This document shows, piece after piece, positions 54,916 to 60,682 of a stretch of DNA of 64,000 nt. Where the stretch lies: contig NW_005434648.1 in the NCBI RefSeq assembly GCF_000315625.1, positions 283,561 to 347,560 of the forward strand. Direction: 5' to 3'. Under the pieces are notes generated by a model. It was given only the letters and a program-made list of their open reading frames with translations. It ran no database searches and was not told where the DNA came from. The position numbers and the translations under genes are program-made. Positions within the stretch are counted from its first letter, which is position 1. Every line of letters begins with the position of its first letter. Source of the stretch: Guillardia theta CCMP2712 (lineage: Eukaryota; Protista; Cryptophyta).

Positions 54916-57064
<2,149 letters not shown>

Positions 57065-57181
57065 GAGGCTGTCCCACGTAAATGTTGTAGAGTATAACAC
57101 TCAACGAGAGAAATGAGCGTATATTTAAGTCTGGCGTTTCATTCAAATCAATAATTCCCCTCAGAAACTCTGATGAACTCA

Positions 57182-59084
57182 TCAGCACGTGCCGTAGGAA
57201 GACTCGCTGGCCTGCACTGACTCGGTGAACCTGCGCTTGTTCCTTCGCTGAAGAACCAAGAAGATGGTGGCCACGCACACTGTGCAAAAATCAGTGCCAA
57301 GTGCAAGAGACAAATTTTTGAAAATACCAGCACAAATGACGAACAAGAAAGACGAAGAACCATAACTCATCGAGAACGTCTGACCCCTTGCAGCAAGCTC
57401 CACCGGCTCTCCTTCCTCCACCACGTGATGCTGCGTAGAAGGGTAAGGAGACGGAGGAGGTTTAGCGTTCGTCTTACATATGGATGGTGGGAATGCTTCT
57501 TGGCAAGCTTGTGCGACTTCTTCGACTTATCGCCGAGGCCCAGTGCCTTCATTCCCTCAGGAGGAGGCTCAGCAAAGACTGGAAGCAGTGAGTTCCAAAT
57601 CACGGTTTACCAAGAGAATCACCAGCCAGCATGAACGAGCCCGTGTCGAAGATAACGTCCAGGGGCTGTGGTGGAGAACCAATGGCCAGCTGGATGTTGT
57701 ACGTCACCATCTGCTGGGACTTGACGGCAACCTTGTCAGGGTGGCTGGCATCGATGGGTTCTGCAGACGAAACAAGTTACAATTACACCTTCCAAATGTC
57801 GTGGAAAAAGAACTTGAATGCTCACCAGCAAGTTCAGTGAACCTAGCCTTGAGAGCCTGCTTCGTTGCTGAGAGTGCACGTACGAAGTGCTGATCGCGCA
57901 TCTTCCTTCTGGCATGAATCTAGAGATTTGCGTCAGTACACAGAGCCACCAGCCCTCGGCTCGATCACCTTAGTCACAGGATGATGCTTCTGGTGAGCTT
58001 TGAAGGTCAACTGATGGGGAGCATGATTGGGAGTGAGGATACTGCGATCAGTTGCCGCTCCAAGCTGGTAGCTGGGATTCTTCGGGGCAAGTCCCATCTT
58101 CTTTGAGCTAAGGTCCGTCAAGTCATGCAACACAACCCACTTGCGGAAGAAAGGGTCTCCCAAGATCATGGTCTCATCAGTTGGCTCAACGCATTCGGTG
58201 TAGGACATGGCATACGTGTGTTCCACTCCAAAGATGTCACGAGTCTTGTAGAGCAAAGGGTGACGCTCGCCTTTCGCTTGCTCTCGCGCAAGAATGCCGA
58301 AAGGAGATGTTGTGAAGTTGCCTTGCACATTGGTGTTGGGCAAAAGGAGACAAGTGGTACCAGAGTCGAACTCTCCAACGAACGCCTTCTTGTGATTCGC
58401 CTCACCGAAATGCAGCAGTTCAACCCCACCATACGAGATGGAATGGATGTCGATGCCGTACACGTTCTCACCCGTCATATGGAACATGGTGAAGTCGTCT
58501 GACAACATGGCCGGATCGTAACCACCGAGCTGCAACTCTCCGAGCTCGTTGTTGGCTGTGAAGGCAAACTTTCTCGGCATCGGCACACCATCACCAGCGA
58601 AGGGCTGATCAAATATGTTCCAACTTGGACGACTGGGCTGAGTCAGAGTCTTGAGCAGAGCCGCAGATCGTGGCTGATCGGCCCAACCGAATCCAAGAAT
58701 ACCATCAACGTCATCAAAGTTTCTGCTGTTGCAGTGCTCGATCATGCCCATCCTTGTCATCACACTGTAACGACCCAGAGTGGCCATATCCGCACCATCA
58801 TAACCTCTCAAGTTGGTGTTGTCCAAGAACGTGACGTTGACGTTGTTCAGCTTGATCAGGCTGAAGGTGGAAGAGTAGGAAGGACGGAAGTACCTCCCGA
58901 TATGATTGCCGTATGTCTCTCCTCCTTGGTGCCAGAAGTGGCTGTCTAGAGATTGCTTGCGATGATGTCTTGACATCTGCTTCTTCGAGCTGGTCTTAAC
59001 GTCGCCCAGGGCATCCTGCACGACCTTGGCGTGCACACCAGCCAGGACCGACAACAGAGCGATACAGAAAATTCTTGAGTGCAT
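57182..59084 (-). CDS. pepsin-family (A1) aspartic protease with signal peptide and C-terminal TM; circularly permuted domain order
   Basis: Exons 59084-57969, 57919-57826, 57760-57623, 57578-57478, 57430-57182 (a further small intron is likely in the last). DGILGFG, GELQLGGYD, FDSGT (58356-58370) and ILGDPFFRK come before YNIQLAIGSPPQPLDVIFDTGS (DTG motif 57636-57650). Confidence 0.9.
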
Positions 59085-60084
59085 TGTTGAAGAAAGTGTA
59101 ATCAGATCCAAATCAGGCTTCAGAATCCAAAGTAAGAGTCGAGCTGATCCTTATTCTGGTAAATTCCTCCCCTCAACACGTGCTTGTCTGCCGCAAACGA
59201 ACTTCCGATAGTTTCGTCCCCAAGGTGAAGAACAGGAGACGGGCGAAACGACAGACTGGAACTGGATTAAACAAGAAGAGTGAGACACCGGCATCAAATT
59301 TCCATGCATGTCAAGTCGAATCCAATCCTATCTGTCCTCCCTAAATCATTCGAGTTGAATAATCGCCCAGATTCTGCTCAGAATCTGAACTTTATGAAGT
59401 GGTACTCTTCCTGGACAACCTCATTGAATCCCTAGCTTCTGTTCATATTTCCGGGTTCTGCCTGCTTCCACTGTACTTCTGTCATAGTGTTCTCCTCTCT
59501 ACTCTGCGCTCCTTCATCTCTTGACTCCTCCTATCTGGCATGCCTTACCTGAAACGTCCCAGCATGAACTGCCGCAGCCTGTTGCACCACCACCTGCTTT
59601 TATTGGCAACCCCCACCCTACCTTCAATACACAACAAGTAAACTACATGTTCATATGTCTTCAAAACTATTCTTGATATTTGAAATATTTTCATCTATAT
59701 CTGCGTTAATATTTCAACAATGAGTAAGTGACCCACCTCCTTGATCGTGAATCCTGACTACCCACCCCTCTTTGAACGTCGGTATCTCAGCAGTGGCTCT
59801 TCGCACACTAGAAGAAATCGGGTCCTAGTACCGCTATAGGACTGTATGACCCCATTAGAAAATGTCACCATTACCCCTCAATAGAAGGTTGAAAATGCGT
59901 GTATGTTTAGGGTGGGTAATCAAATTCGAGGGGGTGGTGGAGAGATCAAAACTAGGGGTTATTATGAAGTGTTAAAGTTAAAAAAAGAAAAAAAGAAAAA
60001 AAGAAAAATCTGCAACGCGAATGATGACAGCAGCGTTGTTGGTATATCAGGGTGGGGAGGAGAGGTTAGGTGAGTAAACGAGAG

Positions 60085-60192
60085 CAGGAGAGGAGAGGAG
60101 AGGAGAGGAGACGAGAGGAGACGAGAGGAGACGAGAGGAGACGAGAGGAGACGAGAGGAGACGAGAGGAGACGAGAGGAGACGAGAGGAGAG
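60085..60192. repeat. (GAGACGAGAG)n decamer tandem repeat
   Basis: Directly visible. Confidence 0.95.
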
Positions 60193-60682
60193 TCGAGGAA
60201 AAGGACCCAAAAGGGGGCGCCAGGAGAAGTCAAACAGCAAGCCAGGGCACCAAAGACCTTCAGTTCAAGAAGAGTTTTATAAGGCCTGTCCCCATTATGC
60301 AAGCTTTCATCAACTCAGTTGTAATGTTGCAAATCCGACATGCCGGAGGGTAACCTTTCGGGCAGGTTGATAGTGCCAAGGTGGATGCACGGAAAATAGA
60401 CAAATGTATAGATCTGCTGCCAAAGGTCCTTCTGATTCATAAACTGAAGTTATCTGAACCGTGTGTTGACCATGGGCAGCAATTTCAAACCATTTTGATA
60501 TCATCCAATTTCTCGTATGGGAAAAAGTCACACATACCGCGATATGAGTGAGATCATACAGCCCTGGAAGTTTCCTTTGAGTTGATTGAGAGCTGATTAC
60601 AGGGCAACACAGTACGATGATGCTTACAAGGTGGACGGTGAGCGCTGCATTCTGGACGCGTTGAGAAATCCCGGTGACTGTC

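What the first reader, a model, noticed from the sequence alone, without database searches (positions are those of the whole stretch)
57182..59084. Circularly permuted pepsin-family aspartic protease
Seen: hand-splicing with in-phase GT-AG introns gives this order: signal peptide; HIGRYFRPSYSSTF; flap region TFLDNTNLRGYDGAD; DGILGFG; C-lobe with FDSGT and ILGDPFFRK; linker; VTKIHARRKMRDQHFVRAL; DKVAVKSQQMVTYNIQLAIGSPPQPLDVIFDTGSFMLAV; linker; TM; short tail. Known: in A1 proteases (pepsin, cathepsin D) the Y-x-x-x-I-x-I-G-T-P-x-Q...FDTGS segment carrying Asp32 is at the mature N-terminus, before the 'F.P..SSTF' motif and before the second D(T/S)G. Here no DTG precedes SSTF and that segment lies after the second lobe. 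Inference: the chain is permuted at the surface loop around pepsin residues 45-50 and keeps both catalytic Asp, so it may be active. I know of no described natural permutant of the A1 fold itself (the plant 'swaposin' concerns only the saposin insert).
Basis: partly seen in the sequence, partly recalled or inferred. Interest (0 to 1): 0.93.

Follow-up and report, generated by a model that had tools for sequence, protein, structure and literature searches.

The report
Circularly permuted membrane-anchored pepsin-family protease
This expressed gene of a cryptophyte alga (Guillardia theta-like genome) encodes a pepsin-type protease in which the first ~45 residues of the fold, carrying one of the two catalytic aspartates, have moved to the end of the chain beside a membrane anchor. 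All such proteases in this genome with both pieces share this order, and I found no published description of it.

Summary
The minus-strand gene has six exons (CDS 59084..57182, 549 aa, no internal stop). RNA contigs from three studies show all five GT..AG introns removed. Pfam, a PDB profile search and a structural alignment agree. Residues ~55-336 correspond to pepsin 46-326 (Z 20.4), and residues ~411-455 correspond to pepsin ~1-45, including the Asp32 DTGS motif.

An AlphaFold2 model and a two-chain ESMFold2 test (0.88; best control 0.08) place the C-terminal piece against the DGILG strand and the DSGT loop. This completes a normal two-Asp cleft.

The order is shared by a large family. All 130 family proteins with a near-complete body and one N-terminal piece among those fetched have it. 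So do 18 of 21 A1 loci in this genome; three have no N-terminal piece and none is colinear. It is labelled in five cryptophyte genera, and also in Ancoracysta twista and the jakobid Andalucia godoyi. On a tree one branch (SH-aLRT 99) separates permuted from canonical A1.

No paper in the searched library describes a natural A1 permutant. The scan already reported the same thing on two other pieces of this genome (s1-433757, s1-434689). Enzymatic activity is untested.

The parts
57120..59264 (-). Transcribed region (mRNA), 5' end at least at 59264, poly(A) site at 57120
   Evidence: RNA contig of X2 reaches 59264. X22 raw reads carry poly-T loose ends before 57120.
57969..59084 (-). CDS exon 1 (aa 1-372). 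It holds the signal peptide (aa 1-19), a basic N-terminal extension (aa ~20-55), the protease body equal to pepsin 46-326 (aa ~55-340) and the start of the linker.
   Evidence: ORF. Pfam Asp profile 43-218. VIA-align to 1psn residues 46-326, Z 20.4, rmsd 2.3 A, 240 aligned. Splice join 57969|57919.
58365..58367 (-). Codon of Asp240 in the FDSGTT motif (C-lobe catalytic Asp, pepsin Asp215 equivalent)
   Evidence: Invariant in alignment A1. Asp in 126 of 130 permuted proteins.
57920..57968 (-). Intron 1 (49 nt, GT..AG). It contains the in-frame stop at 57933-57935 that ends the unspliced ORF.
   Evidence: Skipped in contigs of X1, X2 and X9. Ends checked.
57826..57919 (-). CDS exon 2: linker with the conserved basic motif (V-T-K-I-H-A-R-R-K) and a predicted helix
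   Evidence: Motif conservation in A3. Helix 382-402 in the AF2 model.
57761..57825 (-). Intron 2 (65 nt, GT..AG)
57623..57760 (-). CDS exon 3: relocated N-terminal segment of the pepsin fold (aa ~404-449, pepsin ~1-45) with the IFDTGS motif
   Evidence: Pfam Asp profile 2-23. PDB profile stretch 368-400 aligned to BACE2 13-45. pLDDT 82-93. Docks on the body with ipSAE 0.88 against 0.08 for the best control.
57645..57647 (-). Codon of Asp442 (N-lobe catalytic Asp, pepsin Asp32 equivalent)
   Evidence: Invariant in A1. Asp in 125 of 125 aligned permuted proteins.
57579..57622 (-). Intron 3 (44 nt, GT..AG)
57478..57578 (-). CDS exon 4: conserved Pro-rich motif (VFAEPPPEGMK) and basic stalk
57431..57477 (-). 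Intron 4 (47 nt, GT..AG)
57328..57430 (-). CDS exon 5: stalk and first half of the transmembrane helix
   Evidence: AF2 helix 507-535.
57280..57327 (-).
   Evidence: Skipped in contigs of X1, X2 and X9. The Hanusia protein lacks these residues.
57182..57279 (-). CDS exon 6: second half of the TM helix, basic stop-transfer residues, a 22-aa tail ending Y-G-T-C, and the stop codon at 57184-57182

Best explanation
The locus is a real, expressed six-exon gene. It encodes a type I membrane-anchored aspartic peptidase of the pepsin family (MEROPS A1) whose chain is circularly permuted.

Domain order. After a signal peptide and a short basic extension, the chain starts at the equivalent of pepsin residue ~46. 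It runs through the rest of the N-lobe (SSTF motif, flap, DGILG) and the whole C-lobe (DSGT with Asp240, ILGD). A ~70-residue, mostly disordered linker follows. Only then comes the segment equal to pepsin ~1-45, which carries Asp442 in DTGS. A Pro-rich stalk, one TM helix and a 22-residue cytosolic tail complete the chain.

Predicted fold. In the folded protein the C-terminal segment is predicted to insert into the N-lobe beside the DGILG strand and to meet the DSGT loop. That rebuilds the usual two-aspartate cleft. The protein most likely works as an ordinary acid endopeptidase on the lumenal or extracellular face of a secretory or endolysosomal membrane.

Origin. The arrangement arose once and anciently. 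The usual route would be in-frame tandem duplication followed by loss of both ends; this route is inferred, not shown. It is now the only A1 topology detectable in this genome.

Shown: exon chain, segment order, family conservation.
Predicted: fold completion.
Inferred: catalytic activity, topology, localisation and origin.
For: Transcript. Contigs of three RNA studies remove all five introns. One contig (X9) spans 57120-59023 in spliced form, and a poly(A) site lies at 57120. The CDS is 1650 nt and 549 aa with no internal stop, and is 93% identical end to end to Hanusia phi P0001.

Order.
- Pfam Asp profile positions 43-218 come before positions 2-23.
- PDB profile hits to BACE2, pepsin and renin come as two stretches in swapped order.
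- VIA-align pairs model residues 55-336 with pepsin 46-326 (Z 20.4, rmsd 2.3 A, 240 aligned).
- All top Foldseek hits are A1 enzymes.

Fold completion.
- AF2 pLDDT is 80-98 for residues 61-345 and 82-93 for residues 411-465.
- In the ESMFold2 two-chain test (body 55-348 plus piece 405-470) ipSAE was 0.88, 0.88 and 0.89 against a best control of 0.08. That mark was reached by 51 of 78 solved complexes and 2 of 108 mismatched pairs. The runs agree in at least 90% of contacts and the partner's pLDDT is at least 78.
- The lowest-error contacts pair residues 127-131 (DGILG) with 439-442 (VIFD). Residues 238-244 (FDSGTTC) are in the interface.

Conservation.
- Both Asp motifs are invariant in 34 diverse homologs.
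- The C-lobe Asp is kept in 126 of 130 permuted proteins and the N-lobe Asp in 125 of 125 aligned ones.

Family.
- All 130 family proteins with a near-complete body and one N-terminal piece among those fetched are permuted.
- This genome has 21 A1 loci: 18 permuted, 3 with the body only, 0 colinear.
- On a tree of 45 permuted and 34 canonical sequences the label changes once, on a branch with SH-aLRT 99.
Against: - No enzymatic or protein-level data exist.
- The flap Tyr75 equivalent is Phe in this protein and its clade. In known A1 enzymes this residue is nearly always Tyr (my knowledge), so activity or specificity may differ.
- The structure evidence is prediction only. The complex test can pass from memory of solved pepsin folds, so it shows likeness rather than proof.
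- Logan contigs cannot exclude a minor intron-1-retaining isoform that would stop at 57933 and lack Asp442.
- The RNA label of X1, X2 and X9 is a guess by the index. However, their contigs lack all five introns, which genomic DNA would not.
- The canonical outgroup in the tree is limited to animal, fungal, ciliate and environmental sequences. 'Single origin' is therefore not excluded rather than proven.
Confidence: 0.86

Rival explanations
1. The permuted protein folds as described but is a catalytically dead pepsin-like binding protein, comparable to xylanase-inhibitor or PAG-type pseudoproteases. It would not be an enzyme.
For: The flap Tyr is replaced by Phe in this clade and by Arg in 13 of 130 family proteins. 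No N-terminal A1 propeptide is detected. The Andalucia homolog has DSA in place of DSG in the C-lobe. Four of 130 proteins have Gln at the C-lobe Asp position, so some members have lost catalysis.
Against: In the window's protein and nearly the whole family, both Asp residues are kept, together with their Thr/Ser-Gly-Ser/Thr neighbours and both hydrophobic-hydrophobic-Gly motifs. That is 126/130 and 125/125 for the two Asp and 130/130 for both Gly. Such conservation is not expected in a binding-only protein. Phe is the most conservative change at Tyr75.
Confidence: 0.1
2. The apparent permutation is an artefact: misassembly, a chimeric contig, or two neighbouring genes (an N-terminally truncated protease and a leftover 5' fragment of a tandem copy) joined only by hand-splicing.
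For: The unspliced first exon ends at an in-frame stop (57933). Circular permutation by tandem duplication does pass through such intermediates.
Against: Spliced contigs from three studies join all exons. Transcriptome proteins of Hanusia, Baffinella, Hemiselmis and Rhodomonas have the same order. So do 18 separate loci of this genome, among them an intron-free 563-aa ORF at C9 that holds both pieces.
Confidence: 0.02

Closest known systems
Canonical pepsin-family (A1) peptidases: pepsin, cathepsin D, renin, plasmepsins
   Same: Same Pfam family (PF00026). Same predicted bilobal fold (Z ~20, rmsd 2.2-2.4 A over ~240 residues). Same two D-T/S-G catalytic loops and psi-loop Gly motifs.
   Different: The segment equal to pepsin ~1-45, with Asp32, lies after the C-lobe instead of at the mature N-terminus. 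No N-terminal A1 propeptide is detected, so the pepsinogen-type zymogen mechanism cannot apply as known. The flap Tyr75 equivalent is Phe here.
BACE1/BACE2 (memapsins), type I membrane-anchored A1 peptidases
   Same: They are the best PDB sequence-profile hits (BACE2, E 2e-16). They share the architecture of a signal peptide, a lumenal catalytic domain, one C-terminal TM helix and a short tail.
   Different: BACE enzymes are colinear. Here the TM helix follows the relocated Asp32 segment, so that catalytic strand is the membrane-proximal part. Orthology was not tested: no BACE sequence was in the tree.
Swaposin (plant-specific insert of plant A1 proteases)
   Same: It is a natural circular permutation associated with an A1 protease gene, thought to arise by duplication (PMC3320104).
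   Different: It concerns only the saposin-like insert. The protease fold of plant A1 enzymes is colinear. Here the protease fold itself is permuted and there is no saposin insert.
Circularly permuted papain-like NlpC/P60 enzymes (LRAT-like, YaeF/YiiX-like)
   Same: They are another hydrolase superfamily in which a catalytic residue moved from near the N-terminus to near the C-terminus by permutation (PMC3142127 abstract).
   Different: The fold and catalytic chemistry are unrelated. This is an analogy only.

Membership tests
Peptidase family A1 (pepsin family, Pfam PF00026) | Significant match to the family profile above the curated cut-off | tested here: met
   Exon-1 product: 53.3 bits against a cut-off of 19.9. 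Downstream piece: 23 bits. All 34 aligned homologs match.
Peptidase family A1 (pepsin family, Pfam PF00026) | Two catalytic Asp in D-T/S-G-S/T motifs, each backed by a hydrophobic-hydrophobic-Gly motif | tested here: met
   D240 in DSGT and D442 in DTGS, with DGILG and ILGD present. Conserved across the family.
Peptidase family A1 (pepsin family, Pfam PF00026) | Bilobal pepsin fold with both Asp in one cleft | tested here: met
   Prediction only. AF2 model with VIA-align Z 20.4 to pepsin 1psn. The two-chain test places 439-442 on 127-131 and has 238-244 in the interface. No experimental structure.
Peptidase family A1 (pepsin family, Pfam PF00026) | Colinear order: N-lobe DTG segment at the mature N-terminus, before the SSTF/flap region | tested here: not met
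   Profile positions 1-~35 lie after positions ~40-310. This is the finding itself: a permuted variant, homologous but not colinear.
Peptidase family A1 (pepsin family, Pfam PF00026) | Flap tyrosine (Tyr75 of pepsin) | tested here: not met
   The HMM alignment puts the Phe of VTFLD opposite the flap Tyr of BACE2. Across the family this position is F 62, Y 53, R 13 of 130.
Peptidase family A1 (pepsin family, Pfam PF00026) | N-terminal inhibitory propeptide (PF07966) making a zymogen | tested here: not met
   No PF07966 match in any of 34 members at E<=10. Linker against a canonical propeptide profile: hhalign probability 0.13%, E 0.45.
Peptidase family A1 (pepsin family, Pfam PF00026) | Pepstatin-sensitive endopeptidase activity at acid pH | not testable with these tools
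   Needs expression and an assay.
Natural circular permutant (sensu Bliven & Prlic, PMC3320104) | Two segments homologous to a reference protein but in swapped order, giving the same three-dimensional fold | tested here: met
   Swapped order by sequence. Same fold by prediction. Order conserved in 130 proteins.
Natural circular permutant (sensu Bliven & Prlic, PMC3320104) | Evidence of the route (tandem-duplicated intermediate or fission/fusion halves) | tested here: inconclusive
   Three canonical-order, multi-unit proteins turned up (P0212, P0223, P0230). P0212 is an exact self-repeat, probably an assembly artefact. The other two are unrelated multi-domain or messy models. No intermediate was found.

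The most novel reading that the evidence does not exclude
The permuted A1 lineage would be an ancient eukaryotic invention shared by Cryptista, Ancoracysta and the jakobid Andalucia, and it would have entirely replaced canonical pepsins in cryptophytes. It would also use a new kind of regulation. The 35-140-residue linker with its conserved basic V-x-K-[IVL]-x-A-x-R-[KR] motif would act as an internal prosegment. Its cleavage would give a two-chain enzyme whose Asp32-bearing light chain stays tethered to the membrane.
Probability: 0.2. Interest if true: 0.88.

Novelty: new variant of a known kind. Interest (0 to 1): 0.76.

Why it matters
The pepsin fold is a textbook case of a duplicated two-lobe enzyme. 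To my knowledge, and in the library searched here, no natural circular permutant of it has been described.

A conserved, expanded and expressed family in which Asp32 sits at the C-terminal end of the fold raises several points:
- It shows that the fold tolerates a new chain start at the 45/46 loop.
- It removes the N-terminal propeptide geometry on which pepsinogen-type activation depends, so how these enzymes are kept inactive is an open question.
- It offers a natural system for studying folding order in a two-lobe beta protein, because the last-made segment completes the first-made lobe.
- It is a clean topological character for tracing deep eukaryote relationships or gene transfer between cryptophytes, Ancoracysta and jakobids.
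- It is a practical warning for annotation. Colinear HMM matches report these proteins as N-terminally truncated A1 domains, and gene callers stop at the first in-frame stop.

Tried and rejected
1. Linker as a retained A1 propeptide. By eye the linker motif (V-T-K-I-H-A-R-R-K-M-R) resembles the start of pepsinogen-type propeptides (L-x-R-I-P-L-x-K-G-K-S). Pfam PF07966 did not match any of 34 members. hhalign of 26 linkers against 15 canonical propeptides gave probability 0.13% and E 0.45, in a different register. Not supported; kept only as an idea.

2. Tandem-duplicated intermediates. Three proteins with a canonical order and repeated units appeared among the top 150 representatives. On reading them, P0212 is an exact self-repeat, a likely assembly artefact. 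P0223 is a two-domain protein with two distinct canonical A1 units. P0230 is a messy pepsin-like model. They rank high because two copies add up in the score. None is an intermediate.

3. A relic of pepsin residues 45-74 after the C-terminal DTG segment of the C9 paralog. This was suggested by a Pfam stretch 1-74. Reading the ORF showed nothing convincing.

4. Taxonomy of the deep branches. The profile search with alignment A2 was swamped by canonical A1 enzymes and named no new permuted taxa. The look-up of encoding contigs gave only an unnamed Logan contig for P0218 and nothing for P0136. Cluster look-ups were what supplied the Ancoracysta, Andalucia and Rhodomonas labels.

5. Raw RNA reads of X22. 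They are 3'-biased and cover only ~57120-57680. They confirm the strand, the poly(A) site and two introns with 1-2 reads, but say nothing about intron 1 retention.

6. Literature. Seven searches and two papers read gave only the swaposin case.
Full report
**What is in the sequence**

The feature lies on the minus strand. An ORF from the ATG at 59084 runs to a stop at 57933. It encodes, in order:
- a signal-peptide-like start;
- a basic stretch;
- HIGRYFRPSYSSTF;
- VTFLDNTNLRGYDGAD;
- DGILGFG;
- FDSGTT;
- ILGDPFFRK;
- KMGLAPKN.

No D[TS]G motif occurs before SSTF.

Downstream on the same strand lie in-phase pieces that encode a basic linker motif, then the segment VTYNIQLAIGSPPQPLDVIFDTGSFMLA, then a hydrophobic stretch and a short tail.

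Pfam PF00026 matches the first ORF only from profile position 43 onward (residues 64-254, E 3.7e-14). It matches the small downstream ORF at profile positions 2-23 (E 6.3e-05).

**Is the exon chain real?**

The look-up of sequencing runs returned runs that hold 0.81 of the words of the stretch and others that hold 1.00. That is the pattern expected for spliced RNA against genomic DNA.

I laid four runs on 56950-59350. Contigs of X1, X2 and X9 (three studies) skip exactly five intervals:

| Intron | Coordinates | Length |
|---|---|---|
| 1 | 57968..57920 | 49 nt |
| 2 | 57825..57761 | 65 nt |
| 3 | 57622..57579 | 44 nt |
| 4 | 57477..57431 | 47 nt |
| 5 | 57327..57280 | 48 nt |

All five read CT..AC on the plus strand, which is GT..AG on the minus strand.

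- The X9 contig covers 57120-59023 as a single spliced piece.
- The X2 contig continues unspliced to 59264, so no upstream exon is joined.
- Raw reads of X22 give the strand (first mate on the minus strand) and poly-T loose ends before 57120, which mark the poly(A) site.
The fifth intron sits inside his 'TM' exon and was missed.

Joining the exons gives 1650 nt and 549 aa with no internal stop. The product is 93% identical over residues 1-549 to the 548-aa Hanusia phi transcriptome protein P0001.

Intron 1 contains the 57933 stop. The spliced mRNA therefore reads through into the linker.

**The order is a true circular permutation of the A1 fold**

A profile of 34 homologs was searched against PDB sequences.
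- It hits BACE2, cathepsin E, pepsin(ogen), renin and chymosin at E 1e-14 to 2e-16.
- The hits come in two stretches of swapped order. For BACE2 (3zkm_A), profile 368-400 aligns to chain 13-45 and profile 36-222 aligns to chain 53-241.

An AlphaFold2 model of P0001 was built with that alignment.

| Region | Residues | pLDDT or feature |
|---|---|---|
| Body | 61-345 | 80-98 |
| Relocated segment | 411-465 | 82-93, four strands |
| Most of the linker | ~350-380 | below 45 |
| TM | 507-535 | predicted helix |

- All Foldseek top hits are A1 peptidases (probability 1.0).
- VIA-align pairs model residues 55-336 with human pepsin 1psn residues 46-326 (Z 20.4, rmsd 2.3 A, 240 aligned).

**Does the C-terminal piece complete the N-lobe?**

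I tested this as a two-chain problem: body 55-348 plus piece 405-470, folded by ESMFold2 without alignments.
- The score was 0.88, 0.88 and 0.89 in three runs. The best of three controls was 0.08.
- That mark was reached by 51 of 78 solved complexes and 2 of 108 mismatched pairs.
- The runs agree in at least 90% of contacts, and the partner's pLDDT is at least 78.
- The lowest-error contacts pair residues 127-131 (DGILG) with 439-442 (VIFD). In pepsin, the same contact is made by the 118-122 strand and the 29-32 strand (my knowledge of the fold).
- Residues 238-244 (FDSGTTC) are in the interface. This is the expected contact of the two catalytic loops.
- Caveat: a pass can reflect the model's memory of pepsin structures. 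It shows likeness, not proof.

**Catalytic equipment**

- D240-S-G-T and D442-T-G-S are invariant in alignment A1, as are the Gly residues of DGILG and ILGD.
- Across 130 permuted proteins with a near-complete body, the C-lobe Asp is kept in 126. The N-lobe Asp is kept in all 125 that align there. Both psi-loop Gly residues are kept in 130.
- These counts include close relatives, so they are not independent events.
- The flap Tyr75 equivalent is the Phe of VTFLD, according to the HMM alignment to BACE2. Family-wide this position is F 62, Y 53, R 13.
- No A1 propeptide domain is detected.

I therefore read the protein as most likely an active acid endopeptidase with an altered flap and an unknown mode of latency. 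Activity is inferred, not shown.

**Architecture**

The chain runs as follows:
- signal peptide (aa 1-19);
- basic extension;
- body;
- linker (~70 aa, with a conserved basic motif and a helix);
- relocated segment;
- a conserved Pro-rich motif;
- a basic low-complexity stalk;
- one TM helix;
- a 22-aa tail that starts with basic residues and ends Y-G-T-C.

Most homologs share the signal peptide, the TM helix and a tail ending Y-G-x-C/V. This predicts a type I protein with a lumenal or extracellular catalytic domain. The tail resembles a terminal tyrosine-based sorting signal, but that is only my inference.

**Family and distribution**

- The first homology search returned 79 proteins. Every full-length one has DSGT before DTGS.
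- A profile search of 1.84 billion representatives gave 4309 hits at E<=1e-3 and 119 at E<=1e-30.
- I split the profile into a 'body' HMM and an 'N-strand' HMM. In the first set of 240 fetched proteins, 125 were permuted and 111 had the body only. Only three had the canonical order, and all three are unrelated multi-unit models.
- With all proteins fetched, all 130 with a near-complete body and a single N-terminal piece are permuted.

Census of the window's own genome (87.1 Mb, 669 contigs):

| Class | Loci |
|---|---|
| Permuted order on one strand | 18 |
| Body only, no N-strand found within ~4-5 kb | 3 (C56, C9:1007k, C19) |
| Colinear (canonical) | 0 |
| Total A1 loci | 21 |

- One paralog at C9 is an intron-free 563-aa ORF that holds both pieces.
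- The nearest paralog of the window gene, at C55, is 55% identical.

Source labels place family members in these taxa:
- Guillardia theta. A paralog cluster includes EKX52756.1 (GUITHDRAFT_101908). This, together with the genome size, suggests the organism.
- Hanusia phi, Baffinella frigidus, Hemiselmis and Rhodomonas abbreviata.
- Outside cryptophytes: Ancoracysta twista (P0136, EukProt EP00164) and the jakobid Andalucia godoyi (P0171, EP00762, gene model ANDGO_05950).

Pfam confirms the swapped order in both non-cryptophyte proteins:
- P0171: profile 38-314 at residues 35-336, then profile 2-28 at ~426-453.
- P0136: profile 38-306 at residues 26-301, then profile 1-26 at ~470-496.

P0171 has DSA instead of DSG in its C-lobe. 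I could not test whether these two records are contamination-free.

A maximum-likelihood tree used body plus N-strand, concatenated in the same order for all rows (45 permuted, 34 canonical). It needs one change of the label, on a branch with SH-aLRT 99. This fits a single origin. The canonical sample is narrow and the root is not inferred, so it is not proof.

**Origin**

Permutation by in-frame tandem duplication and loss of both ends is the standard route (PMC3320104), and it would fit here. I found no intermediate. My idea that the linker is the retained propeptide of the second copy failed its test.

**Novelty**

- Seven full-text searches found nothing on a natural permutant of the A1 fold. 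The terms combined circular permutation or permuted with aspartic protease, pepsin, pepsin-like or aspartic peptidase, and Guillardia or cryptophyte with aspartic or aspartyl protease.
- The only link the general reviews make is the swaposin insert.
- The library lacks most subscription journals and MEROPS, so prior notice elsewhere cannot be excluded.
- Public names for these proteins are only 'Peptidase A1 domain-containing protein' or 'hypothetical protein'.
- Within this scan, the same conclusion was reached on two other pieces of this genome (s1-433757, s1-434689). Those are paralogs. The notes agree with my results but are not independent evidence.
- New here, beyond the summaries of those notes shown: the per-locus census, the split-HMM count, the tree, and the Ancoracysta and Andalucia members.

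**Verdict**

The gene is a new topological variant of a well-known enzyme family. It is real and expressed with high confidence, and it is probably active. Its mode of activation and its origin remain unknown.

Noticed in passing
window 55839-57064 (+): A multi-exon thymidylate synthase gene (Pfam PF00303 on three exon ORFs) converges on the protease gene. Its 3' end and the protease poly(A) site (57120) lie within about 60-130 nt of each other. Logan contigs of X1 and X2 merge the two transcripts into one contig.
   Followed up: partly
window 57349: A>G on the plus strand in 3 of 28 minus-strand RNA reads of run X22. It falls in exon 5 (the stalk region). It could be a strain polymorphism, a paralog read or RNA editing. 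No DNA run of the same strain was compared.
   Followed up: no
window ~59960-60300, both strands: Long ORFs on both strands are made of a repeated unit (SSRLLSSPLV on one strand, Arg/Glu-rich EERRREETRGD on the other). This is a tandem low-complexity repeat just upstream of the protease gene's promoter side.
   Followed up: no
P0171 (Andalucia godoyi, EukProt EP00762) and P0136 (Ancoracysta twista, EP00164): Permuted A1 proteins labelled as coming from a jakobid and from Ancoracysta, far from cryptophytes. The Andalucia protein has DSA instead of DSG in the C-lobe. Contamination or gene transfer was not examined.
   Followed up: partly
P0359 = EKX52756.1 / GUITHDRAFT_101908 (paralog, not in the window): The public Guillardia theta model of a paralog is 417 aa and starts in the middle of the protease body, while its Hanusia counterparts are 511-547 aa. 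Public gene models of this family may be truncated. No 100%-identical model of the window's own gene appeared in the homology search.
   Followed up: no
G000 C56:~101584-102171, C9:~1007403-1007891, C19:~210072-210530: Three A1 loci show the body but no recognisable Asp32 segment within ~4-5 kb on either side. They may be pseudogenes, genes with long introns, or single-Asp derivatives.
   Followed up: partly
family alignment, flap position (aa 86 of the window protein): Thirteen of 130 permuted proteins carry Arg, not Tyr or Phe, at the flap Tyr75-equivalent position. The same number carry Asp at the Thr218-equivalent position. This may mark a subfamily with a remodelled active site.
   Followed up: no
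P0212 (704 aa, metagenome representative): A canonical A1 protein made of two exactly identical tandem copies. It is most likely an assembly artefact of a repeated or circularised contig, not a duplication intermediate.
   Followed up: partly
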